64,000 nucleotides of DNA, from assembly GCA_963924565.1 (NCBI GenBank), contig OZ004612.1, positions 10,726,001 through 10,790,000 on the forward strand, read 5' to 3'. Shown piece by piece: positions 25,701 to 53,958 of the stretch. The position numbers and the translations under genes are program-made. This stretch comes from Ascidiella aspersa. Taxonomy: Eukaryota. The notes under the pieces were generated by a model that saw only the letters and a program-made list of their open reading frames with translations, was not told where the DNA came from and made no database searches. Position 1 is the stretch's first letter, and every line of letters starts with the position of its first letter.

Positions 25701-27071
25701 CTGTGGGCTTCGGCCCAAATGTGGGCCCCTTTTTAGTGGGCTGCGTGCTATATTTTTATAATTTCAGTTTTGTCATGTAGATGTACTTTTCACCGTACTG
25801 TATTTTAAAAATGTTGTGACTAAGAGTTTTTTTTTGCTTTTGCTTGTTCCATCATAGGGCCACCGTACTATGCACCCCCTAAAAACTATACTTTATTAAA
25901 TTGTTTATGCCAAAAGACTATGCATACTATTGCATGTTTGCGCCGTATGGTCGTATAAACGCTACAAAGGTATTTTTATTAAATGAGGCTATAAACTTTT
26001 CGCACTACACGCAAGATTTTTTAAGATCAAGAGTTTTATGACGTAACTTTGTGACGTCATTCGTTTTACATAGTTGGCCTTCAATGGCTCTGGAAAGAGC
26101 ATTTTGGGCAGCGACAAAAAAGGTTTGCCGACCACTGCTCTTCACTTTATATTTTGTATTAATTTAAACTTGAAGCAACATACTTTGATAACGAAACCAA
26201 TGATAATAGAACCCAAAACTAAGGTTTACAAATAAGTTTAAAAAACTTATTTTGTGCGATAAGAACGACAAACCATTGGTATTCCTATACACTTGTGACA
26301 AGACTCTTTTTACATCCCATTTCAGCACGGCCATTCCAAGCACCACGACGTGATTAAGTGTTGGCTGCAAGAGGGTAGACTTCAGTTGGGTGACAGGATC
26401 CTAGCCGCAAACGGAGTCAGCCTTCTCAACATGTCTTACAATGAGTGAGTCCATTTTTAAGTCAAATCAATCCATCTTTGCGATTTACAAATCCTTTCAA
26501 CGCTTTAAACCTATGTCGGTTATAAGCACATTGAACATTATTAAGACAAAGTATATTTTACGACTGTACTGATTAAAAAGCAAGTAAAAGGAATGAATTA
26601 TTTTCTTTATAATGCACAAACTAGCAATATTCCTAGGTCCAAATGTAAAGCGAGGTATTTTTGTCATTCATATTCCTTGTTAAAGAAAAATAATCCTAGG
26701 CAATATTATGTACTCGAAACTGACGATTTAATTCGATTACATTCTTCGCGAATCGCTACAGTTTGTTTAATCTAATGTCGCTGCACAGTGGAGCCTTAGT
26801 AAGATATAATTGCTTTAATAAACAAATGCAGCCTATGATGCATCGTAATTGTTCCTGGTGATTGGGATCCTAGCGTTTTACTATTCTTCTTCTCACACGC
26901 AAAAAAGCGTCCTGGATAATCCGACCGCATTGTCCTTCTTTGCAGTTAATAAACAATTGTTTTGTCGACAGAGCCACAAAGACGGTCCGTCAGGCCGGCG
27001 ACTACGTTCGTTTGTTGGTGGGGAGATGCGGACAAGAGGTTGCTATGAAGATCACCTCTTCCAGCTGCTGA
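10793..27071 (+). CDS. RADIL: Ras-associating and dilute domain protein (RADIL/RASIP1 family; RA-FHA-DIL-PDZ), 17 coding exons, about 1437 aa
   Basis: Phase-consistent GT-AG exons: 10793-10919, 14399-14564, 15416-15597, 16363-17076, 17704-17876, 18914-18993, 19390-20335, 20539-20576, 20906-21055, 21545-21668, 22243-22456, 23141-23313, 23906-24056, 24356-25000, 25409-25620, 26326-26444, 26972-27071 (4314 nt, ends in TGA). RA domain: PGILKIFGDAVSPGANYKSVMAT...HEKPLLLQSYWKPLDGLCRRFEIR. FHA-like: HHCVL...LQHGDMLTIG..CMFMYKDP. DIL: YWMSNSLE, EEVVMYAFQQLVYYLTK, QLFAYLFFFTNISLFNTLME. C-terminal PDZ: GLGVGLVDG...GVFVRSLVPDGP...GRLQLGDRILAANGVSL. The first exon is the least certain. Confidence 0.92.
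11076..11126 (+). repeat. Degenerate fragment of the same tRNA-like repeat family (B-box half)
   Basis: TGACCGGGGTGGTAAGTTCGAACCTCATCACAGGCTAGATTTTTCTAATCT aligns with the minus strand of about 18147-18202. Confidence 0.55.
14095..14331. mobile_element. Inverted pair of a ~100-bp repeat carrying a Penelope-type minimal hammerhead core
   Basis: Plus arm 14233-14331 reads CTGAAGA-T-GATAC AAGCCC GTATC-GAAACGTC...TCGATCTACTCGACCTTTCTGGCTTTGCAATTCATTATCAAG. A degenerate reverse-complement arm lies at about 14095-14158. Confidence 0.6.
14750..15399 (+). repeat. Intronic minisatellite, ~150-158-bp unit, about 4 copies
   Basis: Anchor GTCAGACCCC recurs at 14901, 15054, 15212 and 15362, with shared TTCCACAACAA...AACAGCGATTAGACAAT...GAAACAACCAT...CACCTAAT. 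Confidence 0.85.
18074..18555 (-). mobile_element. TSD-flanked tRNA-related retroposon-like insertion with partial tandem structure (354-bp unit plus 102-bp repeat)
   Basis: Direct duplication CATAACCTAGTTTTA at 18074-18088 and 18541-18555. Identical internal 102-bp direct repeat at 18087-18188 and 18441-18542. Contains a tRNA-like cloverleaf. Confidence 0.8.
18165..18239 (-). tRNA. tRNA-like cloverleaf (pseudo-tRNA / SINE head; nominal anticodon GGC in a non-canonical loop)
   Basis: Minus strand: GCCTGCA-TA-GCTC AGTTGGTA GAGC-GA-CGGTC CCGGCTT GACCG-GAGGTC-GTGAG TTCGAAC CTCAC-TGCAGGC-T. All four stems pair and the A and B boxes are intact, but position 33 is C and position 37 is T. Probably not a decoding tRNA. 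Confidence 0.55.
25687..26137. mobile_element. Non-autonomous hAT-type MITE
   Basis: TIRs CAGTGGTCGGCAAAC / GTTTGCCGACCACTG; 8-bp flanks CTCTACAC / CTCTTCAC (7 of 8 match). Confidence 0.85.
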
Positions 27072-28531
27072 TAGGATCTTGGCCGCTCACGTGATGCCAG
27101 TCAGGCGTGACCGTTGTTCAGTGACGTCAGATAACTGGCAAGACTTGAATAAAGTTGACCAGAGTTAAACCAGAAAGGAGTTCGCGACATTTGCAGAACG
27201 TTCGAGACTGTTTTTATTGGCATTTCGTTTTATAAACTATATTGATCTTTGTAGCTCTACAAGTGTCACCGATTTACGTTTTCTACGATTTTGCTCAAAA
27301 GTTCCATTTTAAGCTACTTGCTTTCAGTCGGAATGTTTTTATGTCATTTTTTTTATTTTAACAAATCAAACTTAAAAACGGGCTTTTTTGATTTTTTACG
27401 CCCTTGAGAGCTTATCGCATGGCTTTTCAATGTCTTCCAGATTTTACGTTGTTTCGTAGTCGAAACGAAATATCCCTTGATCAGGATTTGCAGTTTCCCT
27501 TTTACACAAGTGTTCACAGCGACAGGAAAAGTTTTTATCCTGATTCGCCGTTTAGCTACTTCTACCCCTTTCCAAAGTGCAATGCCCGCTTTGTTACGTC
27601 ACTTACTAGACTGTTACGTCACACTGTTGCTGGTCCGTGAACTTATTTGATCGCGAAAAGTGCTCGTTTTTGCGATAAGTGTTGCACATTCGTTTGGCGA
27701 TTTTACATAAGTGCTTGAAATATGTCTTATATATAAATATTTTCACGCGACATTTCTCAAATATTTTTAAAAAGCTGCAATGTTTGGTAAAACCCAATGT
27801 AAGCTACGTTGAACCTATAACTACCGTTAAACGTTAAGTTCATTTACAGTTTACACAGTAAGTTTGTTTTGGCGTGTTTTTTTATAATTTGTGGAGAACA
27901 AAGTTTAAATTAAAAGTTTTGTATGTCACGACAAAGCCAAAAAGGTTTAATGAGACTTTTACTTGTCACAATTTCCCTTTATAATTACATAACAGAAAAT
28001 TTTAGTCATAAACGCACTTCAATATACTTAAGAGCTTATTTTCTTCATTGGAATTTATTTAATCGTTCCTTTATACACTTTAACAAGTAGCAAACTGTGT
28101 TAAATAAGGGACTTGGTCCCCCCCAAATATACCGCGTAGGTGATAGTTTGAAAAGTTACACAAAAAAAACTAGCGTTCGTTTTTCATACATTGTTTTGAC
28201 GAAAATAACTCTGACATGGTGTTCTTCGCAAAGGGCAATCGTCTTTGATTTCGTTTTGTACTATCTACTTTTCAAACACCAAATGACTGTTTTTCTCGCT
28301 TTTTCATTAAAACTTATTTGAAAAAGTTTTGCTACAGTTTAGAAATTTGTGAATCAGGACACCATATAACTTTTCGATAAACCTAATGGAAACTGCGACA
28401 AAGAGATTCATTTTTCTAACAGCTTTGTTTTACCGAACCTTGCACTTGGTGGTTGTGCAGTACAATGTCACAATAGGAGTTTTACAATAACTTCGTGCAA
28501 TGTTTACTCGTGCCGTTGTTACCTTAGGCTG

Positions 28532-29034: not shown

Positions 29035-31962
29035 CTACTCCTGGCTAGTTGCACAGCACCAGCGACGCAATCTTGCTCCCCGGCGGAGTTTAATTTCCTG
29101 CCTGCAGCGGGTAATCTGATTCTGGCACGTCGCCAATTTGTCGAAAGGTGTCGGAGAAACTCGCATTTCCTTGCGAAAAAGTCCGAGGGCACTTCTAAAG
29201 TCAGCCAACTCTAGTTTTTGTACGGCACAGTTCTCGTAACAGTCGGCACACCATATGCTGCTGTAGTCTTTTACCAAGTTCAACGCTTTAGCGGCGCGTT
29301 CGTAATACGTGTATGCTGCATTCTTTTTGTCCTGCCTTTTGTACATGGTGGCTAGACTGTGTAGACAATATCCGTACGTAGTATCATTCGTTTTATCCAT
29401 CAACTTTTCTTTAAATAGCTTTTCACAATACCTGAGTTCTCTTATGTGGTAGGCAATCGCTAAATTGTAATCGTTTTGCATATATGTGCAAAAAGACAAT
29501 TGTGAAAAAGCTACAGCTAATTCCTTGTAACGCCCTGTCACAGCAAAGCCAACGGCGGATATTTCAAAATTCATCACTGCTTCGTCAAATTTGTTTAAAT
29601 TTGTTCGACAAATACCAATGTTGAAATGTGACCTGGAAAGATTTAGTATGCCGACCCACTTGTTGATAGACTTCACTTCAAACGAGACGTCTTCTAGTAT
29701 TGTGGGTTCGCTTTCCTCCTCGGCTAGTTGAAGTAGTGCTTTATATTTGTTCGTGATTACCGGACTGTTCAACAAGTCACAGCATAAGCCCATTTGTAAC
29801 ATAGCGCCTTTATTATTGTTTAACTTTGTGTTACACAATGCCATGTGGGATAAGTAAAATACAGTCCTGAGATCAACAATTTTGTCTTGAGTTAAGCACC
29901 TTTGCAAGAAATATGCTTTATTTAAGTTGTCAGCCGCTTCTTGGTAGAATTCACGAGATTCCAGATTTACGCCGACCAAACCGATTAGTTCCGGTTTGTA
30001 ATATTTATCCGAAAATTGTTCTGACCGTTTTAAACAACTGATTGCGCCATCGTAGTTGGTATTTGATAACTGACAGATTCCTTCAAACAAAAACCAATAC
30101 CACAATTTCGATTTTGGCACGGAGTTGTTCTTTGCGTAACGTTTCACAACCTTATTATAGTAAGCCAAAGCTTTTTCGCCATAGTCTTGTACAAGCAGCA
30201 GACCAACTGTGTAAACGGCCCAACAAAATTCCGGTTCGACAAGTTTATGTGCGTTCTGAGCCAGCTTATTGTCTTCAATTACCGCTAACGCTTTGGCAAA
30301 TTTCACTTGGGAGAAATAGTTGTAAGCAATAAACCAGCAACACTCGAATTTCTTCTGGGAACGTTTGGAGTTGGAAAGTCCCAACATCATCTTATGACAG
30401 ACGTCCAAAGATTTTTGGTACATTTGCAGTGAATAGAATATCGCAATGTCGCCGAGAACTTCATAGCTTCTTACCATGTCGTCTAGCTGGACACCAAATT
30501 TTTTCTTTAGAAATATCTGAAGATCGAAGATAGTTCTAAGGCAATCGACGGCGTTTTCCTCACCCAAAGACCGTAACAGAACGCCGTCGTTTTCGTTTGA
30601 TGCACTGTGAAGATCCACCTGTCGGTCGTTTTCCAAATAGAGATTGAGTCTCACTTCACACGCAAGGGTTACAGCGAACAGCAATCTATCTCGAAATTCC
30701 CCGTCGAAATAGTCGAGTTTGGCCAACTCTCTAATGATCCCAAGCGACGAATTTATTTTCGGCACATGAATTCGGCCCAACGCACTGATAGGTAACGTTA
30801 CGCTGCGGTATACCACTTTTTTAATATCCACGTGTCGCGTGCTGTATTGTGTTTGCTCAAAGTCTGTTTTCCACTTCGTGAGATCATCTTGAATCTGATC
30901 AACGATAAGTTTTCTTGCAATATCATCGCTTTCTCTCTGCAATAGAGTCAAAGACCGGTTCTTAAAATCGTCGAAAATCGCGCGATCTCCCTCTACAAAG
31001 CATGTTTTCGCAAGGATGTCGGAAAGGTGATATCCGTTCTTAATGTCACATTCTCGATTAAGAAAGGTAAGCATTGCTGCGACTGGCTGAATCAGCTCGG
31101 TTTTCCACGGCTTGTCTTGAGTCTCAGCCCGCCCCAGCGGAAACTTGCACGCGTGTGGCATCATTCCATCAAAGGAGATGCCACGAGGCGTGTAGGCGTC
31201 GTAAAAGCTGAAATCCGACTGGTTGTTCAGGTACGGAAGGTACACCGAGGGTATAATCGTTTCTCCGAGACCGATTATAATTAGTTGAAAGATTACCGCT
31301 ACCCATCGAAAATAGTCGAGTACCTTTTGTTGATCCTCTCCTGACTCCACGCTGCTGTCGTCCAGCAAGTAAATATGTTCAAAGTCAGAGTATGGTGTAA
31401 TTTCCTCCCGTGCAAGCGATCCCATTCCAACTAAAGCGTATCGGCAAGGCGGTTCACCTTTTATTTTGACACAATATTGCATTAGATCGCGCATTATGGC
31501 TGTGTATTTTTCCGTAATTTTCTTTTGAATGGTTTCGACGCGCTGTACTCTTTTTTGAGCAGTAAGCTCTTTGTTCATTGTCTTCATTTCTTCACGGGCA
31601 TACTGCCTCATTTCACCCGCTTGTTTCTTAAATAGTTCGATGTGTTCACCTAAATCGGAGATCTGTTTGGCGGTTTCTGCCATTGTAAAGACGTTTAAAC
31701 AAAGATTGCTGAAGTCGCTGTCAATTTCTGCTGTATTTTCAGGTTTTCGCGCACAGGCTGCCTTAAATAGCACCGCGCTTCTTATTAGAGACGTTTGCTT
31801 TTCGTATAAGTCTTTGGATCTCTCTGCCAGTTTGTGGTAGGCCAGCCCCAGTTGATGAATAACGGCCGCCGTCTTTGACACATCTTTTTCCCTCCCACCA
31901 ATAAAACAAAGTTTCCTGAGTTCAGAAGAAATCTTTTCCACGCGCTTTTCATCTTCAGTCAT
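29035..31962 (-). CDS. Nucleotidyltransferase (pol-beta superfamily, GlnD/GlnE/DUF294-like)-TPR repeat protein, about 975 aa, one large coding exon
   Basis: Uninterrupted 2.9-kb ORF; the track starts at TTG 31974, the first ATG is at 31962. Motif CRYALVGMGSLAREEITPYSDFEH fits hG[GS]x(10)DhE. It is followed by a helical region (VDIKKVVYR...LLFAVTLACEVRLNLY) and TPR-like repeats (e.g. SHFNIGICRTNLNKFDEAVMNFE, CLHSLATMYKRQDKKNAAYTYYERA). A 10-nt upstream coding exon at 32348-32357 is possible. Confidence 0.88.
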   Translation of the reverse strand: MTEDEKRVEKISSELRKLCFIGGREKDVSKTAAVIHQLGLAYHKLAERSKDLYEKQTSLIRSAVLFKAACARKPENTAEIDSDFSNLCLNVFTMAETAKQISDLGEHIELFKKQAGEMRQYAREEMKTMNKELTAQKRVQRVETIQKKITEKYTAIMRDLMQYCVKIKGEPPCRYALVGMGSLAREEITPYSDFEHIYLLDDSSVESGEDQQKVLDYFRWVAVIFQLIIIGLGETIIPSVYLPYLNNQSDFSFYDAYTPRGISFDGMMPHACKFPLGRAETQDKPWKTELIQPVAAMLTFLNRECDIKNGYHLSDILAKTCFVEGDRAIFDDFKNRSLTLLQRESDDIARKLIVDQIQDDLTKWKTDFEQTQYSTRHVDIKKVVYRSVTLPISALGRIHVPKINSSLGIIRELAKLDYFDGEFRDRLLFAVTLACEVRLNLYLENDRQVDLHSASNENDGVLLRSLGEENAVDCLRTIFDLQIFLKKKFGVQLDDMVRSYEVLGDIAIFYSLQMYQKSLDVCHKMMLGLSNSKRSQKKFECCWFIAYNYFSQVKFAKALAVIEDNKLAQNAHKLVEPEFCWAVYTVGLLLVQDYGEKALAYYNKVVKRYAKNNSVPKSKLWYWFLFEGICQLSNTNYDGAISCLKRSEQFSDKYYKPELIGLVGVNLESREFYQEAADNLNKAYFLQRCLTQDKIVDLRTVFYLSHMALCNTKLNNNKGAMLQMGLCCDLLNSPVITNKYKALLQLAEEESEPTILEDVSFEVKSINKWVGILNLSRSHFNIGICRTNLNKFDEAVMNFEISAVGFAVTGRYKELAVAFSQLSFCTYMQNDYNLAIAYHIRELRYCEKLFKEKLMDKTNDTTYGYCLHSLATMYKRQDKKNAAYTYYERAAKALNLVKDYSSIWCADCYENCAVQKLELADFRSALGLFRKEMRVSPTPFDKLATCQNQITRCRQEIKLRRGARLRRWCCATSQE

Positions 31963-34904
31963 TTTCAAAGCCAAATTACAAGCTCACACAAAGAAAAATA
32001 CAGTATACCATTCTTCTCTATATTTCTAAATATATTAGAGTAGACATTGTTCGAACTTCTTTTACAACAAGTATAGTTATAGCCTTGCCCTGCTTAATTA
32101 GTCCAACTGGTTTCGGTAAATCCTTTTTCCATAGGCCTACTTAATTATAGCATACCGATTGGGTCAGTAAGGTGTTTCATTTCTCTGAATTGCCAACCTT
32201 AAAGCAACAACGCTTTTTGAACGAAAAATTACACTTGAACAGTTATTAGTGCGCGCACAATATGCAATCAATTATTAACTTTTATTTGTTTAACACACAA
32301 CGTTCCCTCAAAGTTAAACATGTGTGGCGATAAAAAAGTAATCTTACCGTTAGGCATGGCGATGTCTGTTTTTACTGCAATGACTCAAACAACAAATAAA
32401 TCAAATAAATCTAAACAATAAATCAGACAGTTTTACCATAGAGCACTAATGCTCTATGGTTTTACGATATATTTAAATTTCTTAGAGTGCATCGATTTTT
32501 TTTTTAGTTGAAGCAATTTTAAAATTTAAATTTTCTCCGTGAATATTTAACTATATTACTCAGAAGTAAAACAAATCATTGTGATTTAAATAGTTGAAAC
32601 AGAGTGTCGTACGATAACCCAAAAAACAATAATTAAATATACTATATTGAATCACGTATAGGCCCTATAGTTAGGTATTTCTTGTTTTTACTGCAATTAA
32701 TTGTCACTGTAAGTTTTTTGCCTTTCGTTCTTGCGCGCGCATAATGGCGCGACGCATCGCTTAGGCACAATCACTAATTAGGCGCGGTAGTGCGCGCCTC
32801 TCACGTGAAGAATGCAATTAGCTTCTACCCTTTGGGGCCACTTTAGTTTCTATATAAAGCTTTTGTTTTGCGGTGCACTGGTGCAGTCATCACCAACATC
32901 GTTACCGAAGACACTATACGCGCCAGACATCAAACTTTGGAATGTTTTCATTTTTTTCGCAACCTTTGGTTTGTATATGAAGTATTGTGCGCTAAACTTT
33001 TCCTTTTTCGTCTTACAGAAAACCTGTACCTATACTGATATTGCTTTCTACTGTGCGAAAATTGTATGTTCGCAATTGCCATTGATTTCGCAAGCAAGTA
33101 ACAGAAGTGCCGAGTATTACAAAGCTTGATTTCTACAGTCACCGTTTGTAAACTTATTGGGTTTCTTTTTTTTTCGCTTCATTTTCATTTGTCTTTTTAG
33201 CAACACTATACATAATTAAGGTTTTAGCTTAAGGTGACAGCTATATAGCAAGAGTCTCCATTCAAATTGCTTTTACAGCCAATTAAAATGTAACTATAAT
33301 TCGTGTCTCGCAATGGAAAACCTTCGAAATACGAAAATTGAAATCGATAATGAAATAATTTAGACAACAAAGCGCGTCGAGTTCCCACATAAAATGTCCA
33401 ATTAAGCCGCATGCGACCCGCAGGCTGCACGTTTGATACACTCGAACTATACTCTATTTTCTATAGCCAGGGTTAATATCTGCAAGGACCTAAAATTACG
33501 CTACCCTGTAATGACCAGCGCAGATTAAGGATTTTGGTTTCGGGGATGCAACGAAAATTTTAAGAATGATATTACAAACTTATGTCATAAAATAAATATT
33601 CCTAAAAACACCTGTTGTTCTCGAGCGAACTCGTGCGCAAAATGCAGCTCAAAATCATTCTGTCACGCAAAGTGCGAAAAACATTGGGTTTATTTGGCTG
33701 AAATTGGACGAACTTTTTACTTAGAGGAGACGTGACGTTTTTAGGCAAATTAAGGAGATTCAGATATTGTTCGAAAAAACTTTCTCGAATTTGAGTCGCA
33801 TGGCACAACCTTCCGTCGTATGTATAGCGCATTTGGGCTGAATTGATCCCTTAAAATAAAATACTAAAAATTAAAATGTAGTTTTTTGGCCTGGTGCCTC
33901 ACTTGAATCCACCCTATGCTTCCTGGTTGTGACGTAGAGTTTTGTGCCCGTATTTCTTTAATGCAGGCTTTTACTCATTTCTTCTATAGAGAAATTATTG
34001 GATTTACAAATTTCGAATTGTCAAAGTTTTAAATATTATAGGCCTACCATATGTCCTCTTTTCTCAAGAAAAGTGAATCGTCCTCCGAGGACGCTCAAAA
34101 ATGCCCAAATGTCCTCTTTTTGCGCATTTCGAGTTAGTTGCTTATACTTTCAACAATTTTTTTTCCAAGAAAATTACTGCAGCCATGAACATCGCTAGTT
34201 TAAAAAAGGTTTTCCAACAAATTGTAAGTTGATCTCGTTAAAAAAAATATCATTTCTTATTGGCAAAAGTTAAGGGAACCGCAAAGTATTCATGGGCTTA
34301 ATCTGAAAAATAAATTTGATTTGTTGTTTTTGTTTCTACTTTCGTTTTACTTGCCGTCAAAAAATGTCTTCTTTTTTGGTGCTAAAAATATGGTAGCCCT
34401 ACAATAATAGCTCATAATGGGCCTGTCTATGAATCAATAAGTGGTAATCTTTTTTGACTAATAGGTTGTGTAACGTGCTTAATCGGGAAACCGAAAATGT
34501 GCCGAAAAGCCCGAACCCATGCCGTTTAACCGGACAATACTCTTTTGCTTGTGATTTCCAGAGGTAGTATAATTAATGTTAACAACACAAGGTGCTGGCA
34601 TAATTGGATTATATGCAACATTACCACTTTAAACTAAATAAGAAACAACGGGAGTTAAGTTTGAATATCGGGTAAAGGTATCCACTGGATAAAATGGTAC
34701 GACTCCTAGACGTACTTAAACTGAAAAGTTTACCTTATCACAAGGCATAAGCCATCAACCCATTTATATTAACTGGACGAAAGAATACATTGTTATAGTA
34801 AGTTCGACGAAGAACTCAGTAAGATAAAAATCAATGAGACAAACTAAGTATTAACCTAAATATAGGCATTTGTTTAGAAAGTAGGCTATTATTATGTTTT
34901 TGAC

Positions 34905-45900: not shown

Positions 45901-47779
45901 GTATATATGTTGACGCTTGCTGTCGCGACTTGGCTCGTATACGCGAAAGTCGAGGAGATTGTTCAGGGATATCCTGGTCGCCCGTATTGCGCCAAGTTCG
46001 CCTGAAAAATGGGCGGGGAGTATAGTTTGTCTGTCAAACAGATTGGCTTCGTTTTCAAGGTGTTTGTGTTTGCCATGGATTTTTGTGCTCAAGAATCGAC
46101 CAGTGTTGTTAGGGATGATTGCGTGTCATACTTTTTTTAATTTTTTGCACTTGTATAAATTTATGGATGCTATTGTGTCGGCGACAGATTAAAATTTAAA
46201 AAGGGAGAGTTTGGATTAACGCTAGGTTTTTTTCAAATTTCATCCTGATGAACTTTGCTCAAGACACCAAAGTTCCCTTTGGCTTTGTTTACGTGTTGGA
46301 AAGTTATCGGTAGTAAAATTGACCAAAAAATGGTTTTGACTGCACTTTTGTCTGGATATGTTTAGTTGACTGTTTGCGGTTTCAATCTATTTTTATTAGT
46401 CTAATATTACTTTATATTAATTAAGAGTTTTCTCTAGTCTTATTGTAGTGAATTTAATGTATGAAGCAAACAGCATTTATATTACTTGCTGTCTAAAGGC
46501 ATTGTTTGTAGACTTTAAGGATAAAATGCCAGGTCATGTTTTTTTTACTTTTATCACCGAGAGCACGTGTGTGATTACAAAAATAGTTTTTGGCAACTTT
46601 GCTGACCAGAAATAGTTTTTTTGGTAAACTATAGAAAGTGAGGTTTAACGTTAAACTTTAATCCTCATGAGCTAACTTTGATCGAAGACATTATTATTTA
46701 AGATGTTAAAAACGAACGTAATTTACAAATAAACCAAATAGACTGCTAAGACAGTTACCGCCGATTTGGGTAAAGACGTCATCAAAGCACTTAATCTACT
46801 AATATTGCAGCTTCTTCGTAGTATTACATATAGCACTTTTTAGATTGTCTTACGTTAATTAAACTGCGTCATATAAACAGTTAAACACGTACTTCAAAAA
46901 CACTGCGTATAGTTATATTTACGAATAGATTAAACGTCTATAATATCTGATCAAGATTAATCTAGTGGGTCTGTTGGCTGGAAATTCCTCGGGGAAAATC
47001 CAAACGCTTTGCAAATGCATTAATTACCGTGATTATAGCGGACAGTATGCCGCTTGCTTTACACAGATACTCTTCCCAGGCAACTATATAAAGTTTATGT
47101 CTATTAATGACGTAAATTGTGACTAATTGTTGTTATTTAAAGTCAACTTCGAACCTGTTTTATGTCCCAAGGCGTCATCTATCCTTATTTTTAAAGTGTG
47201 GCATTTAAACTATAAATGAAAGTTTTAATTAGATTATCAAACTGGACCGATGGCAAACTTAGGAGAAAAAAACAAATACTAAGCGAAAATCTGTGGTTCG
47301 ACGAAATTTGCACAATAATATGGGGTTCGATAGGGTACCAAAGGTTAAGAACCACTGTTCTAAGGTTATGTGATGTATAATGGCCACTCTAAAAAACAAA
47401 AATTCGTCATTGCCTAATTTTGGAGTGAAATTACACTAAAGATTTATTTTTCGACACAAACGGTTGTCAAGATAAGAAAATATCTGACAACTTCAATACT
47501 AAATGCACCTGAGTTAAACATATATTCAACTTTTTAATCTTTAATTACTTGAAGTTACAACTCTTGTGTGGGATTTGCTTTGTTGGTATTTAGGTAATTT
47601 GTGTTTAAAAACCCAAAGCTGTGCGTTTGTTCTACGCGCCCAAAATAATCGTTTCTGTATATTTCCAGGGAGAACTTTAATATTGTTTCTAGAAGGCCCG
47701 ATATGAGCGTCGATTATTAGTATCGCTTTGTCGATCTTTAGTCTGCAACACAAACAAGTATTTGCGTAATATCAGAATA

Positions 47780-50700
47780 ATGATGACGTCACTTGGCACC
47801 GCAGTGGTTTCCTTGGCGCTCTTTGCTTGCGTCACACTTGTGGTGACGTCATGCACCGCCTGTACCAAGTTCCTGCAAAAGCGAAAGCAAAGTGAGTTCG
47901 TTTTTATAAAACCGTTTCTTTCAAATAACGTCTCTGGTTATAAAAGGCATTTTGCCAACGTTTTCTGCGGGAATGCGTCTGATTCACATTAAATCCGTCT
48001 ACAATAGCAAATAAAAAGTTGCCACTTGTGATTAGTAGTGGGTAATGCGTTTCAAATGGCCGTAGGAAGCTATTAGGAAGCTATAAGCTATTAAGACCCC
48101 TTCAGAAAATGTTAATATTGGCCAAGGTTAGTCAAACGCCTGATACGATGCAAGAGGTTGTTTATAATCTTTTTTTTTTTTTTTTTTTTTTGAATCTTGT
48201 TAAATCTGTCAAGAAAGGCTTCCTACGCTTAGCAAACCATAAACACAATTATTGCAACATTTTATTTTTAAAGTAAGCAACTCGTGTCAGGCCCTTGCAA
48301 CTTTACATATATCGTTTGTTCATAACACGCTGTTTTATCCTGAACAGAAAAAGCAGATCAAAAGAAAGACGAGGAAAAAGGTGAGATCGCGATGGAAGAG
48401 GCAGACGGATTGCAAAGTGGAAAAGATAATGAGGAGGACAGTGACAAGGGTAAGGAAAACGGGGTTACCAACGTCGCGTTCGAGTCCAATCCTCTGGAAG
48501 ACGATAATGGAAAGAAGAAGGCGAACGGGGATGCTCCGGCATTGAATGGAAGTCAAGATGAGGACCAGGTGAAAGAGGTGGAGGACTCGTCGGAAAAAAA
48601 GGTTCGTGTATTGAAGAGGTTAGCGATCGCAAAATGAAAAAGGGCGGACTATAGATGTATTTGATAAACCTATTTTAATAACAATAAAGGATTAGCTTGG
48701 TAATGAATTGCAAAGCCATAAAGTTCGAGTAGATCGACATCATCTTGATTAGGGCGTTTCGATACGAGCTTGTATCATCTTCAGATAATTATGTGGTATC
48801 AACTGAAGCTGATAAGGTCGTATCGAAACGTCTTAATCTGGATAATATCGATCTACTCGACCTTTTTGGCTTTGCAATTCATTATCAAGCTACATTACAG
48901 ATCCGTGCATAGAGTACCCAAATACAGGATTAATTTGATATTTTTAAATTTAATGCTAGAAATCCGGACAAAACTGAAACATAATTTTATAACAGTTGGT
49001 TGAAATATATTTTCGCTTACACTATCATATCATGGATAGCCTTTTGAGTGAAAGTATTAAAGTGGATTAGGTCACATTGATTTTTGAATATGTGACATTA
49101 TATACTGCCCTTTTAAAATATACCATAATAACGACTTCGGGTGATTATACCTAATACGTGACACTTGAATTAAACACAGATTACAAACGCCAATTGAACG
49201 AGAACCGCTTTCGCAGTACATCACACTATAGTTTGCAATGAGCTCGCCGTCGTGTTGCCAAACAAACAAACGTATTGTCGTGGCAAAAACGCCACTTTAG
49301 GGTAAACTTCGGCAGCTTTGCACCCACATTTACAAAACCATTCGCATTCCGTCGGTCTCTTTTATCGGGACCGCGCCGGGCCGGCCAACGATTAAAGATA
49401 ACGTGCCGCCGTGCTTCCAAGCGACATACTTACAGGCCTATAAAAGAATCGCGTGTCTATAATTCGCGTCATCCTACCCGCGTGTCGGGCAAACTATTGC
49501 GCGATGCCGACATGCCTTGAAATTTTATCGGCAGATCGATCGCTCTACCTTCACCGTATCGCAGGTTCTTATTGCTTTGAACCGCCCAAATGCAGTACGA
49601 AACAGGCTTGTCCGTCACAGTGAAACGAGTAAAAAGCGCTCGCGCTATGCGAACTCAACGTTTAGAGCAGCGTAAAGGTGGTGATAATGTTAGAAACCGT
49701 ACTCGTCATTTTCCGGCAGTCAAATATTAGAAAGCTGGAACCGTATCCTACCTGTGACAACGACAAAGAAAACCAGCCACTTTTTAGGGCCATAAATCTT
49801 TATGTTTGTGAACGGTATATTTTTTAAATTTTAATCATGTTTGGAAAGACAATGTTGCGACACGAGACTAAAGGGTTTGATTTCTAGTTAATATTTGTCA
49901 CACGCCACAACAGATTTTTTCATATTTTGGTTGGTATCTTGAAATAAACAGAAAAGAAAATATTCAAACTTATTTTATATTTCTTAACAATTTAGTCGCA
50001 TTGTCAACATGCCAAAAAAGTAATACGTTAAAATTCCAACGCAACTATACTTTTAGAAATACTTCACTCTGTTTATTTTGTACATTTTCATTTTAACAAT
50101 ATTTTGATTGTTGGGTTGTAAAACTTCCTGGGCGTTTATGAGGGGAATTTTATTGCATTTATTTTGCTTAAAGTTCTTATAACAACATCTGCAACTATAT
50201 ACCTCCTATTAGTAAAATGGAAATGTTTGTTGTTTTTTAGGAAACCAAGGCCCCAGATTCCGCGCGAACTGAAGACGAATCAAAAACGCAGACACAGGAA
50301 GTTAATCCGAAACTGGAGAGCGAGAGAGCAGAAACCAATGGAGACTGCCCGCCAGGCCATTGTACGTATTAGCCCTCTATAATGGTAGAGTATTTTTATT
50401 ATAGGGAACATTAAAATGACCAATTGCTGTCTGGACAAGCCTGATAAAGCGTTCTTTGACGTATAAAATTAACATACATCGCTTGCTTGGAATGCAGTTA
50501 ACGCTCAAAATGTTTAATAAGTGTTCTTTTGACTTTTTACCGAACGAGTCGATCGAGAGTCTCTAAAAAATATTTTAGTCGATCGTAATCAAACATAAGT
50601 TGGCTACACTTGCTTATAGCATCGAGGCACCTGCTATTTTAGGGTGGTTTCGGTGCCGATCCGATACCAAATTTGTTTAAGCATTTCAGCAAATCTTCTA

Positions 50701-52997
50701 CGAAACGAAACAGGTAATTGTAGCCTTTTCTTACTTAGGTTAAACTGGACAGAACATGTAATAGTTGCACCTAGAAGCACACAAACTTTGTATTGACCTG
50801 ATTGGTGTCAGATCGGAAGGTCGCACTTTATAAGAATTATGCACAACAATAAATATATATGTTAACATTTACAATTTGCAGATATATTTATTGAGCACAT
50901 TTCGTGAATAGAAACATTTCAAATTAAAGGCATATAGGAATATTTATAATGTATTAACGACACACTTTTTCGATTTAATCTTGGATTTCTCCATAACCGC
51001 ACCTCATCGCGCAACGCAGCGTTTAGTTTTTGGTGTGATGTCATTTTAAGGATGGACTCGGTCAGCAATGCACAACTTTTACTAGGCCGCGGGCTAAGTT
51101 TGCTTGAAAGTCGGTTCACTGACCAAAAATAAGCGAGCGTGGTCTCTAAAATATCGCTAAGGCAGACTGTTGGCAAAACATTCGTCGAACTGTTCGGTCT
51201 GTAGGTAATGTATGCGGTATATGATTTAAAAGTTGGCAAAACTGTATTTTTGAAATTTTTGAATTTATTAAAATTATGTTATACCCACGTTAAAATGCAC
51301 TCCCCGCAATACCAAAATTATTTTTTGTTAAATGGCATAGTGTTTAAATCATTATCCTAATCGATTTGCCTGCGGCATTAGCTGCAATTTTTCGTGTTAA
51401 AAATACCTTTAAATAGTAAACAGCAATCCAATAGGAGTGAACGCTATCGAAATCAAGATATAGTCTGTATATATTTCCGTAAGCGATTTTTTAAACATTT
51501 TGAATGTTTAGTTTACTGCTACACCCCAAGTTGAATATGTTGAGGGAAAAATCGTAAAAAATTGAATACAATGCAATCTGGTGAAAGAAGGAATGCACTT
51601 AATATATATAAAGGCCTTAAATAAAAATTAACAACTTACAAAAAAAGCTCATTTTTATAATACATTTAACTACCAATAAAGAGCTTTCGCCATAGTGTTA
51701 CGATCACGGGCTGCAAATGCAAAATGCCTTAAAGGTGCATAACATTGGGGTTGAAAATGCAGAACATCAAGGCTAAGCTAGAGAAGGCGTTTGTATACAG
51801 GCGAGGAGCGATGCTAGAGTTTCGGCTTTCCTTTTACACAACTTTTCAACAACTTTCCGTGCAACAGATTGCGACGGTCCCGAAGATGCGTTCGAGGACG
51901 AGACACACCCGGGTGACCCCAGATCCCCTCAAACCCACCGGGACTCGATCCCCACATTCTCCCTGCGTCCGTCCGACGTCGAGGACTTCTCGTACGTGGT
52001 TGGCGACAGCGAGTGCCAAAACAGCATTATGGAGGAGTCGGCACCCACCCAAGACGCCGCTCCTCCTTCGAAGATCCTCACAGACGAGGAGAACCTCTCG
52101 AGATTCGACGGCGTGCTGATCCGCGGAGGATGGAGAAGGAGCGTTAAGCTTCGCGACCTCCTGGACCTCAAGCTAATCGATGCGAGAACAGCAGATGACG
52201 TTAAGAAGACACTGGAGGAGCTCAGTGATGAGGAGAAGATGTCAACGGTGCCGGTCGATTTGAAACCGATTCTTGTCGGCAAGAGTCCGATCGCCGGGAT
52301 TCTGGTTTCCGAGACTGGCGACAAGCAGTCGGTATACCGGGCGGCCAAGGACGGCATCATCCGACGAGGAACGGCCATCAGTCTCCTGGAGGCACAGGCC
52401 GCTAGCGGGAGCATAATCGACCCGTTGACCGGGAGGAAGATGTCCGTGACCGAAGCTTCTCAGTTGGGACTGCTCGACAAGGTCTACGAGACGGTTGTGT
52501 CGCGCGCCGAAAGGGCAGTGACCGGCTACAAGTCGCGCGTCTCCGACGACGTGCTGTCTCTCGGCCAAGCGATGGAACGCGGTCTAGTAATGGAATCGCA
52601 CGGCGTTCGCCTTCTCGAAGCCCAGCTTGCCACCGGAGGCGTTATTGACCACAAAATCAATGCGCGACTTCCGCTAGACGTCGCCGTGGAGCGAGGCTTG
52701 TTGGATCGCCGAGTTGCTGACATCGTGGCTGCGGCCTGCGCTGATAAGCCAATGGACGAGCTATCCGGCGAGCTGAAGACCTTTTTTGATCCCAACACGG
52801 AAGAGAACGTCACCTACAGCGAGCTGATGCGGAGGAGCATGGTGGACGCCGACACTGGGATGCGACTTTATCCTTTGGAGAAGATCGGCAAGGGACGCTA
52901 CAACTACTCGGGTCACTCCGGCCGTTCGAGCCTGGCTTCGTCCAGGGCTAGCAGCCGGGAAAGTATTCCGGCCGCCGTGGCCGCTTCATCGCCTTGA
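47780..52997 (+). CDS. Small plakin-repeat (plectin/desmoplakin-type PRD) protein with N-terminal transmembrane segment; 4 exons, 538 aa
   Basis: Exons 47780-47891, 48348-48601, 50241-50361, 51868-52997 (1617 nt, intron phases 1, 0, 1 match, all GT-AG). The last exon has clear plectin repeats: PIAGIL...LLEAQAASGSIIDP..., AERAVTGYK, RLLEAQLATGGVID, KTFFDPNTEENVTYSELMRR...DTGMRLYPL. The PRD exon is high confidence; its joining to the three upstream exons is inferred. Confidence 0.82.
48691..48892. mobile_element. Second inverted pair of the hammerhead-core repeat
   Basis: Minus arm about 48691-48790 (CTGAAGATGATACAAGCTCGTATCGAAACGCC) and plus arm about 48798-48892 (CTGAAGCTGATAAGGTCGTATCGAAACGTC). 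Both align with 14233-14331. Confidence 0.65.
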
Positions 52998-53958
52998 AGT
53001 TGTTTGGAAATCGTTGGAAGGACCGCCAAGCAACGGATCGAGGAGCGAAGGCTGGACTTACTATGTTCTTGTCACCTTCCTTACATTACAGTCGCTCCGT
53101 TTTGCGCTCACCTTACGACTCTAATAGTTAATTAAACCAAAATATGTTGTTTATCTAAAGTCAATTTTGTGCAGCATTTATCGATAAATCAATGCGATTT
53201 TCTCATACCGCACCCGCTTTATCACAACGTAGCTGGCAATTTGAAGGTAAATCTTGAAGCAAAATATTTTTTTTTAAATCATGAATTTTCTCTGCGAGCG
53301 CGCAAGACTTTATTGCTGGCAAAAGTTGGGTGCAATGTAAATTTGTAAAAACAAACAGTTTCGTTAGATGCACATCTCTATGCCGGGACATTACTAACTC
53401 GTTTATAAAAAGTAAGTTATGCTGATCATCACATATTCATTGTGCATTTGTTGTGACAATTTTGTCTGCCTTAATAGTTAACTTGAATGTTTTTTTGTTT
53501 AATTGGGTACTTCGGAACATAATGTAAACTGTTGAATCCTGGCAAGGTTAAAACAATAAGAGAATCATTGGTTAAAACAACTTTTTTTTTTATAATTGAA
53601 CTTCAAGTTTGTTGGTAGAAATTAGCCTTGATTTGACTAAAAGTGCAAAATAATACTAATTGTTTGTGGAGAAACAGTTTTGTTTGATTGTACCAACTAC
53701 CGACCATAAATTAATAAAGTTGCCTAAAAGTCACTAAAGAATATCAAAACTTGAAAAAGGAAAAGTTGAACTAAACCTGTTGTTTATTTTGTGTATTGTA
53801 TATTTTATAACTTTTAACGTTTAGTTGAAATATGTTGGATTAAAGCTTGTTTCCAAATCATATCTCTATTATGCTAGGTGTTATAACAACCTCACAAAGG
53901 TATTAATTTGCTGCAATATTAGTTTAATAATTTTGCTGCTGTCAAAGTTGAATAAACA

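What the first reader, a model, noticed from the sequence alone, without database searches (positions are those of the whole stretch)
47780..52997. Membrane-anchored 'mini-plakin': transmembrane helix fused to a single plakin-repeat domain
Seen: the spliced 538-aa product has MMTSLG-TAVVSLALFACVTLVVTSCTAC (hydrophobic helix ending in CxxC), then TKFLQKRKQKK (basic), about 190 aa of acidic low-complexity linker, one complete plakin-repeat domain, and a Ser/Arg tail (SGHSGRSSLASSRASSRES) resembling desmoplakin/plectin GSR tails. It has no plakin domain, rod or actin-binding domain. No such exons are visible upstream, where three unrelated genes lie. Established: PRDs bind intermediate filaments and normally occur in large soluble cytolinkers that reach membranes through cadherin or integrin complexes. 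A short ectodomain + TM + CxxC + basic stretch is the layout of palmitoylated type III adaptors such as LAT and PAG. Inference: a one-protein intermediate-filament-to-membrane tether, a possible alternative to vertebrate desmosomes or an organelle anchor. I know of no described protein with this architecture.
Basis: partly seen in the sequence, partly recalled or inferred. Interest (0 to 1): 0.82.

Follow-up and report, generated by a model that had tools for sequence, protein, structure and literature searches.

The report
Membrane-anchored single plakin-repeat protein, tunicate family
A sea-squirt gene really does encode a short protein that joins a membrane-spanning helix directly to one intermediate-filament-binding plakin repeat domain, and it belongs to an undescribed, tunicate-wide set of such genes that may tie the filament skeleton straight to membranes in animals that lack desmosomes.

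Summary
The window comes from an ascidian genome.

**Gene model.** Exons 47780-47891, 48348-48601, 50241-50361 and 51868-52997 have canonical splice sites and add up to 538 aa. Spliced contigs of one public run, which covers exons only, show the E1-E2 and E3-E4 joints exactly. Contig arithmetic fits the E2-E3 joint. An in-frame stop lies upstream of the ATG.

**Domain.** The last exon holds a complete plakin repeat domain (PRD): Pfam Plectin 2e-33, predicted-structure TM-score 0.92 to desmoplakin PRD-B. It is B-type, not C-type.

**Conservation.** Orthologues of about 500 aa exist in Ciona, Clavelina and Styela. They share the four-exon layout (shown for Ciona), the N-terminal helix ending in SCxxC plus basic residues, the acidic linker and the Ser/Arg tail.

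**Wider family.** At least three, probably four, of the five PRD loci in this genome start with a transmembrane exon. Such proteins also occur in Oikopleura and in marine metatranscriptomes. Some paralogues have a signal peptide before the helix, which puts the PRD in the cytoplasm.

**Best reading (0.6).** A cytoplasm-facing PRD, probably on a palmitoylated single-pass anchor, tethers intermediate filaments directly to a membrane. Which membrane is unresolved.

**Known precedents.** Plectin 1b and the dystonin-2 isoforms are membrane-anchored, but they are giant conventional plakins. I found no paper describing this architecture.

**Verdict.** New variant of a known kind, interest 0.68.

The parts
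47690..47779 (+). 5' untranslated region (minimum extent), with an in-frame TAA at 47690-47692
   Evidence: X3 contig record 17 starts at 47690 and runs unspliced into the ATG. Translation of 47690-47890 begins with a stop.
47780..47891 (+). Exon 1 coding part. Short N-terminus (4 aa); hydrophobic helix at about aa 5-28 (47792-47863) ending in SCTAC; then the start of the basic stretch TKFLQKRKQ(K).
   Evidence: KD mean 2.29 over 19 aa and 2.02 over 23 aa; flank charges 0 (N side) and +5 (C side). SCxxC[KR] is conserved in Clavelina, Ciona, Styela, P0010 and L020. Joint to exon 2 seen in a spliced contig.
47892..48347 (+). Intron 1 (GTGAGT...CAG), with a poly-T tract around 48170-48200
   Evidence: zero X3 depth; joint 47891|48348.
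48348..48601 (+). Exon 2: lysine-rich start, then acidic low-complexity linker (31% D+E, net charge -13)
   Evidence: Covered by X3 contigs 17, 18 and 19. No Pfam family.
48602..50240 (+). Intron 2. Holds a very high-copy palindromic element (arms 48693-48771 and 48814-48892).
50241..50361 (+). Exon 3: acidic linker (25% D+E). Needed to keep the PRD in frame.
   Evidence: X3 contig 21 joins 50361|51868. A TAG directly upstream in frame (50238-50240) forces splicing at this acceptor.
50362..51867 (+). Intron 3 (GTACGT...CAG), with a second high-copy repeat at about 50400-50700
51868..52115 (+). Exon 4, first part: acidic linker predicted to be disordered (net charge -15, pLDDT below 50 for E4 residues 1-58)
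52116..52889 (+). Exon 4, complete plakin repeat domain (E4 residues 83-340), B-type
   Evidence: Pfam Plectin 2e-33. phmmer to desmoplakin PRD-B 1LM7: 3e-49, covering residues 22-240 of 248. AF2 pLDDT above 90. Foldseek to 1LM7: TMt 0.92, rmsd 2.5. 1LM7 = PRD-B per PMC4782060.
52890..52997 (+). Exon 4, Ser/Arg-rich tail (11 Ser in 35 aa, net +4) and the stop codon (52995-52997)
   Evidence: The tail SSLASSRASS(R/K)ESIP is nearly identical in Clavelina and Ciona. Disordered in the model.
52998..53785 (+). 3' untranslated region.
   Evidence: X3 contig 21 is 2033 nt, and 1548 nt of it lie up to 53300. Sequence. X4 RNA reads, with the first mate on the - strand, lie at 52522-52718 and 53113-53300.

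Best explanation
The locus is a real, expressed four-exon ascidian gene for a 538-aa single-pass membrane protein.

**Anchor.** The first exon encodes an uncleaved N-terminal signal anchor. Only about 4 residues precede a helix of about 23 residues. The helix ends in a conserved SCxxC motif followed by a cluster of Lys/Arg.

**Topology.** By the positive-inside rule the helix inserts with the N-terminus outside (or in the lumen) and the rest of the protein in the cytoplasm. The juxtamembrane cysteines are probably S-palmitoylated.

**Linker and domain.** About 210 residues of acidic, disordered linker hold one complete B-type plakin repeat domain (PRD) at a distance from the membrane. A conserved Ser/Arg tail, probably regulated by phosphorylation, follows the domain.

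**Function.** The PRD binds the rod of cytoplasmic intermediate filaments through basic groove residues. A single PRD binds weakly, so strong attachment would come from many copies concentrated on a membrane. The protein is thus a direct, one-chain membrane-to-filament tether.

**Context.** It is one of several paralogous TM-PRD tethers in tunicates, which lack desmosomal cadherins.

**Shown:** the gene model, its transcription, the domain, the conservation and the anchor features.
**Inferred:** topology, palmitoylation, filament binding, and the target membrane. A secretory-pathway or plasma membrane is favoured.
For: **Gene model and RNA.**
- Splice sites and frames are correct.
- Exon-only coverage and spliced contigs in run X3 show the E1|E2 and E3|E4 joints exactly. 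The k-1 overlap arithmetic fits E2|E3.
- A stop codon lies upstream of the ATG in the same contig.

**Domain.**
- Pfam 2e-33.
- PDB phmmer: desmoplakin PRD-B 3e-49.
- AF2 model pLDDT above 90 over residues 70-340.
- Foldseek TMt 0.92 to 1LM7.

**Conservation.**
- Orthologues of 493-504 aa in Clavelina, Ciona and Styela share the helix + SCxxC + basic motif, the acidic linker, the PRD and the tail.
- The Ciona gene has the same four-exon layout and the same upstream neighbour.

**Topology.**
- Flank charges are 0 (N side) against +5 (C side), and +3 to +6 in the orthologues.
- Paralogues P0040, P0042 and P0052, from single mRNA contigs, carry a signal peptide, a short ectodomain, a TM helix and CCKKRCKRK before the PRD. 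This fixes their PRD in the cytoplasm.

**Ligand and binding residues.**
- Intermediate-filament genes are present in this genome.
- The equivalents of envoplakin K1901, R1952 and R1876 are basic here. The first two are basic in every row of the alignment; R1876 is basic in most but not all tunicate PRDs aligned (PMC4782060).

**Family.**
- TM exons sit upstream of PRDs at three further loci of this genome.
- TM-PRD proteins are found in Oikopleura, Styela and Clavelina.
Against: - No experiment or predictor of topology, palmitoylation, localisation or filament binding could be run here.
- Only 3 of the 6 envoplakin groove residues are basic at the aligned positions. The PRD has a net charge of -4 to -5, although vertebrate desmoplakin PRDs aligned here are similar, at -2 to -7.
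- The helix is only moderately hydrophobic (23-aa KD 1.84-2.02). With its positive C-flank it also fits a mitochondrial outer-membrane signal anchor.
- TAC|T could formally serve as a signal-peptidase site.
- The RNA run with raw reads (X4) gave almost no coverage, so expression level and tissue are unknown.
- The E2|E3 joint is inferred, not directly observed.
Confidence: 0.6

Rival explanations
1. Same protein and same cytoplasmic PRD, but the N-terminal helix is an organelle signal anchor. The target would be the mitochondrial outer membrane, as for plectin isoform 1b, or the ER/nuclear envelope, as for dystonin-a2/b2. The protein would then position organelles on the filament network rather than anchor filaments at the cell surface.
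For: - An N-terminal helix at residues about 5-27 with a net positive C-flank is exactly the description of the plectin 1b anchor (PMC2426950).
- Group-1 helices are only moderately hydrophobic and rich in Ser/Thr/Ala (KD 1.84-2.02), against 2.4-2.9 in the other TM-PRD groups.
- No signal peptide precedes the helix.
Against: - The hydrophobicity is still clearly above that of plectin 1b (1.49).
- A conserved pair of juxtamembrane cysteines is typical of proteins palmitoylated in the secretory pathway (established knowledge, not tested here).
- Paralogues with cleavable signal peptides must enter the ER.
Confidence: 0.15
2. The protein is membrane-anchored, but its PRD does not work as a load-bearing filament tether. 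It could bind another acidic ligand, sequester soluble filament subunits, or act as a regulated scaffold through its phosphorylatable tail.
For: - A single PRD binds weakly: envoplakin PRD KD is about 19 uM for the vimentin rod (PMC4782060).
- B-type PRDs have only moderately basic grooves.
- Three of the six groove residues are not basic here.
- There is no dimerising rod.
- The long acidic linker could fold back on the basic groove (inference).
Against: - Every PRD characterised so far binds intermediate filaments (PMC4782060).
- The key K1901 and R1952 equivalents are invariant, and further basic residues (R212, K221, R223) are conserved across tunicate PRDs.
- Membrane clustering gives avidity (inference).
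Confidence: 0.12
3. The hydrophobic segment is a cleaved signal peptide, and the linker plus PRD are secreted or lumenal.
For: The segment is N-terminal, hydrophobic and ends in small residues (T-A-C|T) that could fit the -3/-1 rule.
Against: - There is no positive n-region.
- The uncharged stretch is 25-30 residues long in all orthologues, which is too long for a signal-peptide core.
- It is followed at once by +3 to +6 net charge, which opposes translocation.
- In paralogues that do have a true signal peptide, a separate TM helix follows and the PRD stays cytoplasmic.
- No extracellular PRD is known.
Confidence: 0.04
4. The model is an artefact: the TM exon and the PRD exon belong to different transcripts or genes.
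For: - The E2|E3 joint was not directly laid.
- Run X3 is of unrecorded type.
- The raw-read RNA run barely covers the gene.
Against: - The E1|E2 and E3|E4 joints are seen in contigs at similar depth (9.3, 9.7 and 12.9), with overlaps that chain them together.
- Skipping E3 breaks the frame.
- Independent RefSeq or GenBank models in three other ascidians, and single mRNA contigs, carry helix and PRD together.
- The exon layout is the same in Ciona.
Confidence: 0.03

Closest known systems
Desmoplakin C-terminal filament-binding region (PRD-B, PDB 1LM7/5DZZ)
   Same: Complete plakin repeat domain. 41% identity and TM-score 0.92 to PRD-B. A Ser/Arg-rich tail follows the last PRD. The PRD is encoded in one large terminal exon.
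   Different: Desmoplakin has a plakin domain, a dimerising rod and three PRDs. It is soluble and reaches the membrane through plakoglobin/plakophilin and desmosomal cadherins. Here one PRD is fused through a disordered linker to its own TM helix. The tail follows a B-type PRD, not a C-type one, and has no GSR repeats.
Plectin isoform 1b (PMC2426950)
   Same: The first exon encodes an N-terminal signal anchor (residues 5-27, positive C-flank) that inserts a PRD-bearing protein into a membrane and links that membrane to intermediate filaments.
   Different: Plectin 1b is a cytolinker of about 500 kDa with an actin-binding domain, plakin domain, rod and six PRDs. Its anchor is less hydrophobic (1.49 against 2.02) and has no CxxC. 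It is an alternative isoform, not a dedicated gene.
Dystonin-a2/b2 (BPAG1 isoform 2) with an N-terminal transmembrane domain (PMC6975176; P0154)
   Same: N-terminal TM helix followed by a basic cluster. The b isoform carries a PRD.
   Different: It is a giant spectraplakin in which thousands of residues (actin-binding domain, plakin domain and, in the b isoforms, spectrin repeats) surround the PRD. It localises around the nucleus.
Envoplakin (single-PRD plakin, PDB 4QMD)
   Same: Only one PRD. The groove residues K1901, R1952 and R1876 have basic equivalents here.
   Different: Envoplakin has a C-type PRD. It is a soluble protein of about 2000 aa with a plakin domain and rod, and it works as a heterodimer with periplakin.
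Palmitoylated type III transmembrane adaptors (LAT, PAG/Cbp)
   Same: Layout only: a very short ectodomain, one helix, a juxtamembrane CxxC and a long disordered cytoplasmic part.
   Different: There is no sequence relationship and no tyrosine signalling motifs. The cytoplasmic part ends in a folded cytoskeleton-binding domain.
Other tunicate TM-PRD paralogues
   Same: The examples are 'desmoplakin-like' Ciona P0037 and Phallusia P0035, 'plectin-like' Styela P0125 and P0149, and Oikopleura P0106. All have an N-terminal TM helix, a basic flank, an acidic linker and one or more PRDs. All are uncharacterised.
   Different: They have different helices, often with an intramembrane Glu/Asp and sometimes preceded by a signal peptide. 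They carry one to four PRDs, and the PRD is split over many exons in the group-2 paralogue (shown for the own-genome copy). Group 1 is a separate, well-supported clade (100/98).

Membership tests
Plakin repeat domain (PRD) proteins (Pfam PF00681 Plectin repeat) | Plectin repeats above the Pfam gathering score | tested here: met
   114.3 bits against a cut-off of 20.5, E=2e-33
Plakin repeat domain (PRD) proteins (Pfam PF00681 Plectin repeat) | Complete globular PRD (4.5 repeats), not isolated repeats | tested here: met
   phmmer covers residues 22-240 of the 248-residue desmoplakin PRD-B chain. AF2 pLDDT is above 90 over residues 70-340. Foldseek TMt 0.92, rmsd 2.5 A to 1LM7.
Plakin repeat domain (PRD) proteins (Pfam PF00681 Plectin repeat) | Basic filament-binding groove residues (envoplakin R1876, R1895, K1901, R1914, R1952, K1994) | tested here: inconclusive
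   Three of six are basic at the aligned positions (K190, R215, R266). The other three are V, V and S, with conserved basic residues nearby (R212, K221, R223, R321/R322). This is typical of B-type PRDs.
Plakin repeat domain (PRD) proteins (Pfam PF00681 Plectin repeat) | Binds intermediate filaments | not testable with these tools
   Filament genes exist in the genome.
Conventional plakin cytolinkers (desmoplakin, plectin, envoplakin, BPAG1e) | N-terminal plakin domain (spectrin repeats + SH3) | tested here: not met
   No Pfam family in exons 1-3 or in the pre-PRD part of exon 4. Only about 245 residues lie outside the PRD. The transcript has a stop upstream of the ATG.
Conventional plakin cytolinkers (desmoplakin, plectin, envoplakin, BPAG1e) | Central coiled-coil rod for dimerisation | tested here: not met
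   The linker is short, acidic, rich in Gly/Pro/Asn and of low complexity. Its part within exon 4 is predicted to be disordered. No coiled-coil predictor was run.
Single-pass type III (N-out, C-in) signal-anchor membrane proteins | One hydrophobic segment of at least 19 residues near the N-terminus, not preceded by a signal peptide | tested here: met
   KD19 = 2.29 at residues 5-23. The uncharged stretch is 29 residues long. The same holds in four orthologues.
Single-pass type III (N-out, C-in) signal-anchor membrane proteins | Positive-inside charge bias that places the C-terminal side in the cytoplasm | tested here: met
   N flank 0, C flank +5 here. C flank +3 to +6 in Clavelina, Ciona and Styela.
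Single-pass type III (N-out, C-in) signal-anchor membrane proteins | Experimentally or algorithmically confirmed topology; not cleaved | not testable with these tools
   DeepTMHMM and SignalP are not available. The support is indirect: paralogues with signal peptide + TM + basic cluster.
Palmitoylated transmembrane adaptors (LAT/PAG-like layout) | Juxtamembrane CxxC at the cytoplasmic end of the helix | tested here: met
   SCTAC here; SCASC, SCLFC, SCMSC, SCASC and CSFC in orthologues from five other sources.
Palmitoylated transmembrane adaptors (LAT/PAG-like layout) | S-palmitoylation of those cysteines; tyrosine-based signalling motifs | not testable with these tools
   Acylation needs chemistry. 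There is no homology to LAT or PAG. This is a resemblance of layout only, not membership.
Mitochondrial outer-membrane signal-anchored proteins (plectin 1b type) | Moderate helix hydrophobicity with a net positive C-flank | tested here: inconclusive
   Positive flank: met. Hydrophobicity is 2.02 (23 aa), against 1.49 for plectin 1b. That is intermediate between plectin 1b and the other TM-PRD groups (2.4-2.8).

The most novel reading that the evidence does not exclude
Tunicates anchor intermediate filaments with a family of direct single-pass TM-PRD tethers. This replaces the vertebrate chain of cadherin or integrin, adaptor and giant plakin.

- There are at least three to four paralogous genes per genome.
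- The family is present from larvaceans (Oikopleura) to ascidians.
- The group-1 'mini-plakin' described here is its smallest, palmitoylation-type member.

This would be an independent, previously undescribed solution to filament-membrane attachment in the sister group of vertebrates. It would bear on how the desmoplakin- and plectin-type filament-binding module was deployed before desmosomes arose.
Probability: 0.4. Interest if true: 0.82.

Novelty: new variant of a known kind. Interest (0 to 1): 0.68.

Why it matters
**Background.** Desmosomal links between cadherins and intermediate filaments are regarded as a vertebrate invention (PMC9171019). How the sister group, the tunicates, fastens its cytoplasmic intermediate filaments to membranes is not described in any paper I could find. 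Tunicates do have such filaments.

**What a TM-PRD gene family offers:**
- concrete, genetically tractable candidates, since Ciona has the orthologue LOC100182972 and electroporation and CRISPR are routine there;
- a minimal natural system, one helix and one PRD, for studying how a single low-affinity PRD engages filaments when concentrated on a membrane;
- a comparison point for the origin of the desmoplakin/plectin C-terminal module;
- a compact natural template for engineered membrane-to-filament tethers.

**If the anchor proves to be organellar,** it would be a dedicated gene doing what plectin 1b does in mammals.

Tried and rejected
**Raw-read RNA run.** About 6% of X4 was read and it gave only a few reads on exon 4 and the 3' UTR. 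It yielded no junction evidence. It does suggest +-strand transcription, because the first mates lie on the - strand.

**Conventional plakin upstream: rejected.**
- A stop lies upstream of the ATG in the spliced contig.
- The upstream genes are afadin-like and a DUF294/TPR ORF.
- There is no other Plectin repeat in the window. The nearest is 1.76 Mb away.

**TM-exon scans.**
The exon may lie further away; in L020 it is 9.8 kb upstream.
- No TM exon and no plakin-domain similarity was found within 20 kb upstream of the C4:3.72 Mb multi-PRD locus.

**Uninformative search.** A search for Pfam SH3_10 in the own genome found nothing, but the controls were silent too.

**Correction.** I first read 1LM7 as desmoplakin PRD-C. 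PMC4782060 shows that it is PRD-B. The notebook was corrected.

**Literature.** Seven full-text searches found no description of a TM-fused PRD protein in tunicates. One Ciona paper mentions a plectin/desmoplakin/epiplakin orthologue enriched in papilla cells, without noting a TM (PMC7397655). I could not tell which paralogue that is.

**Earlier findings.** The search of earlier findings held nothing for this place or for these words.

**Not done.**
One local script appended the junction codon and 12 residues of exon 2 to exon 1 only to count flank charges.
- Complex prediction was not used. PRD-filament contacts are weak and electrostatic, and the filament genes here are multi-exon with no single reference.
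- No coiled-coil, DeepTMHMM or SignalP run was available.

Full report
**1. What is in the sequence**

- The ATG is at 47780.
- Exon 1 ends at 47891 before GTGAGT.
- Exon 2 (48348-48601) follows an AG and ends before GTTCGT.
- Exon 3 (50241-50361) follows a T-rich tract plus AG and ends before GTACGT.
- Exon 4 (51868-52997) follows CAG.

The lengths 112+254+121+1130 give 538 codons plus a stop.

Translating each exon by reference gave these products:
- E1: MMTSLGTAVVSLALFACVTLVVTSCTAC-TKFLQKRKQ.
- E2 and E3: two acidic low-complexity exons.
- E4: a 376-codon reading frame (375 residues plus the stop) with the repeat domain and the tail SGHSGRSSLASSRASSRESIPAAVAASSP.

Pfam finds Plectin repeats only in exon 4 (E=2e-33, 114 bits against a cut-off of 20.5) and nothing in the other exons.

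I did not send the joined product to any search or fold tool.

**2. Is it one transcript?**

Three runs of one study hold the stretch. X1 and X2 cover introns and exons evenly, so they are DNA. X3, of unrecorded kind, covers only the exons, at depth 9-13. Its depth in the introns is zero outside two high-copy repeats.

The X3 contigs are spliced:
- A 396-nt contig lies on 47690-47891 and 48348-48541.
- A 2033-nt contig lies on 50247-50361 and 51868-53300, and runs a further 485 nt.

Two allelic 126-nt contigs (depths 6.5 and 3.2) start at 48512 and have 38 letters beyond 48599. If the joint is 48601|50241, they end at 50276. That gives exactly the 30-nt (k-1) overlap with the neighbouring contigs on both sides. 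This is an inference from arithmetic, not a laid joint.

Two further points support exon 3:
- Skipping it would shift the frame into a stop at 52119.
- An in-frame TAG directly precedes 50241.

The 5' contig begins with an in-frame TAA at 47690. No upstream coding exon is therefore joined in that transcript.

The raw-read RNA run X4 gave only a handful of reads on exon 4 and the 3' UTR. Their first mates lie on the - strand, which suits a +-strand RNA.

**3. Origin and orthologues**

The exon-4 product finds proteins of about 500 aa:
- Clavelina lepadiformis, 69% identity, 504 aa.
- Ciona intestinalis LOC100182972, 59% identity, 500 aa.
- Styela clava 'plectin-like', 493 aa.

The window is therefore ascidian.

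All of these proteins start with a hydrophobic helix ending in SCxxC followed by K/R. An acidic linker, one PRD and a nearly identical tail SSLASSRASS(R/K)ESIP follow.

The Ciona gene has the same four-exon layout: aa 1-39, 40-100, about 100-125 and 122-500. It also has the same upstream neighbour. That neighbour's last exons match window 26320-27071 at 71-87% identity. In the window this neighbour carries RA and FHA domains, so it is afadin-like.

A motif scan proved specific, finding only the true exon in the window and in Ciona.

**4. The domain**

Sequence matches to solved structures, in order:

| Structure | Match |
|---|---|
| Desmoplakin 1LM7 | 3e-49, residues 22-240 of 248 covered |
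| First domain of 5DZZ | 114 bits |
| Plectin PRD6 | 105 bits |
| 1LM5 | 89 bits |
| Envoplakin | 79 bits |

PMC4782060 states that 1LM7 is PRD-B and 1LM5 is PRD-C. The domain is therefore B-type.

An AlphaFold2 model built on a 36-row alignment has pLDDT above 90 for residues 70-340. Residues 1-58 and 347-375 are disordered. Foldseek gives TM-score 0.92, rmsd 2.5 A and 41% identity to 1LM7.

Six groove residues of envoplakin were shown to matter for vimentin binding (PMC4782060). Here they align as follows:

| Envoplakin residue | Here |
|---|---|
| R1876 | K |
| K1901 | R |
| R1952 | R |
| R1895 | V |
| R1914 | V |
| K1994 | S |

The K1901 and R1952 equivalents are basic in every aligned row. 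R212, K221 and R223 are conserved across tunicate PRDs.

The net charge of the PRD (-4 to -5) is within the range of the vertebrate desmoplakin PRDs aligned here.

**5. The anchor**

The best 19-residue window has a Kyte-Doolittle mean of 2.29, and the best 23-residue window 2.02. The stretch without any charged or amide residue is 29 residues long. The N flank has charge 0 and the next 15 residues have +5.

This is too long and too positively flanked for a typical cleaved signal peptide. By the positive-inside rule (established knowledge) it fits an N-out/C-in signal anchor.

Independent support comes from paralogues recovered as single mRNA contigs from marine metatranscriptomes. They have a signal peptide, a short ectodomain, a strongly hydrophobic helix and CCKKRCKRK or CRKRRKQKRR before the linker and PRD. 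That places the PRD of those proteins in the cytoplasm.

The conserved juxtamembrane cysteine pair suggests S-palmitoylation (inference).

The identity of the membrane is open. Plectin 1b is held in the mitochondrial outer membrane by a helix at residues 5-27 with mean hydropathy 1.49 and a positive C-flank (PMC2426950). Group-1 helices (1.84-2.02) lie between that value and the 2.4-2.9 of the other tunicate groups.

**6. A family, not a single oddity**

The genome has 308.6 Mb in 75 contigs, and the window is C6:10,726,001-10,790,000. It has five loci with Plectin repeats.

| Locus | TM exon upstream of the PRD(s) |
|---|---|
| Window gene | yes (this finding) |
| C4:30.08 Mb, 'desmoplakin-like' group 2, PRD split over many exons | MALFWSFNYGPGYLDFFLDLFSIVILLDVIGLIMLTRFLW |
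| C6:12.54 Mb, two PRDs, orthologue of Styela 'plectin-like' P0125 | SPGILAAVVILSVELVVIITVIAYLLWRSHHMRKKK |
| C1 multi-PRD locus | probable: MDGGLIFLFAFLGIEIALVGGLVTYLLYRRQPPSK, which matches the N-termini of P0140 and Styela P0149 |
| C4:3.72 Mb | none found within 20 kb |

A full HMMER pass over 1.84 billion representatives gave only 509 PRD proteins. Among the top 129 new ones, 14 have a strongly hydrophobic window, and in 11 of these it lies at the N-terminus. The named ones are Oikopleura dioica, Styela and Clavelina. The only non-tunicate is a frog dystonin TM isoform.

A maximum-likelihood tree of 46 PRDs makes group 1 a clade (100/98). Its sister (96/92) is formed by the first PRDs of the Oikopleura protein and of an unnamed 1059-aa TM protein. 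Group 2 is a separate clade (100/98).

**7. Mechanism proposed**

*Shown:*
- a dedicated, conserved, transcribed gene;
- an N-terminal helix with the features of a membrane anchor;
- a disordered acidic spacer;
- a complete B-type PRD;
- a conserved Ser/Arg tail;
- filament genes present in the genome.

*Inferred:*
- the helix anchors the protein with the PRD in the cytoplasm;
- the cysteines are acylated;
- the PRD binds filament rods electrostatically, as in envoplakin and desmoplakin;
- a single PRD binds weakly (about 19 uM for envoplakin), so function depends on many copies in the plane of the membrane;
- the tail modulates binding through phosphorylation, as the desmoplakin tail does (my own knowledge, not tested here).

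Rivals are an organellar anchor (0.15), a role other than filament tethering (0.12), a cleaved signal peptide (0.04) and a model artefact (0.03).

**8. Comparison and novelty**

The closest known relatives by sequence are the desmoplakin/plectin PRDs.

The closest by mechanism are plectin 1b and dystonin-a2/b2 (PMC6975176). In those, an alternative first exon adds a membrane anchor to a giant cytolinker.

What differs here is a stand-alone gene in which the helix is fused through a spacer directly to the PRD. There is no plakin domain, no rod and no actin-binding domain. This design is multiplied in tunicates.

The sequences are public but carry only automatic names. Seven full-text searches found no description of the architecture. 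My library covers open-access papers only.

I rate it a new variant of a known kind, with interest 0.68.

Noticed in passing
window 14000-27100 (+): RA domain 16419-17117, FHA 19403-20383, last exons about 26320-27071: The upstream neighbour is an afadin-like gene (RA + FHA domains). Its 3' exons match the upstream neighbour of the Ciona orthologue at 71-87% amino-acid identity. The afadin / mini-plakin gene order is therefore conserved between two ascidians.
   Followed up: partly
window 29035-31974 (-): An intronless 979-aa ORF with a DUF294 putative nucleotidyltransferase domain (2e-9) and C-terminal TPR repeats. This is an unusual combination for an animal genome. Its origin and function were not examined.
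   Followed up: no
window 48693-48892 (intron 2) and about 50400-50700 (intron 3): The first is a palindromic, MITE-like element with 79-nt arms (87% complementary, 42 nt apart). Its summed contig depth is about 240,000 against about 60 for unique sequence in the DNA runs, and RNA reads also lie on it. A second repeat in intron 3 reaches a depth of about 10,000-18,000. Many contig variants and loose ends show a large, diverse family.
   Followed up: partly
L018:6930-7085(-) = G000:C4:30.085 Mb; L017:1078-1164(+) = G000:C6:12.536 Mb; L023:3217(+) = G000:C1:7.728 Mb: Three further PRD loci of the same genome have N-terminal transmembrane exons upstream of their PRDs. They are the group-2 'desmoplakin-like' gene, the two-PRD orthologue of Styela P0125, and a probable anchor of the C1 multi-PRD gene. 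Only the C4:3.72 Mb locus showed none within 20 kb.
   Followed up: partly
P0125, P0131, P0113, P0106, P0160, P0037, P0035; L017, L018, L023 (TM helices): Most TM-PRD paralogues outside group 1 carry a conserved acidic or amide residue in the middle of the helix, for example SVELII, CLEVTV, GIEIAL, ILELIA and ILLDVI. This hints at pairing with a partner helix or at oligomerisation in the membrane. Group-1 helices lack it and are rich in Ser/Thr/Cys instead.
   Followed up: no
window 47824, 48430, 48433, 48495, 51999, 52641: Polymorphisms between the public runs and the assembly are as follows. In the TM exon: synonymous (47824, F). In the linker: two non-synonymous (48430 N>K, 48495 L>P) and one synonymous. 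In exon 4: two conservative V>I changes, 51999 in the pre-PRD linker and 52641 in the PRD; the latter restores the residue seen in orthologues. The pattern fits a constrained anchor and domain with a relaxed spacer, but the numbers are too small for a test.
   Followed up: partly
L013, L014 (marine metatranscriptome contigs encoding P0042): Complete mRNAs for signal peptide + TM + PRD proteins occur in Tara Oceans and JGI marine metatranscriptomes. They presumably come from pelagic tunicates, but the organism was not identified.
   Followed up: no
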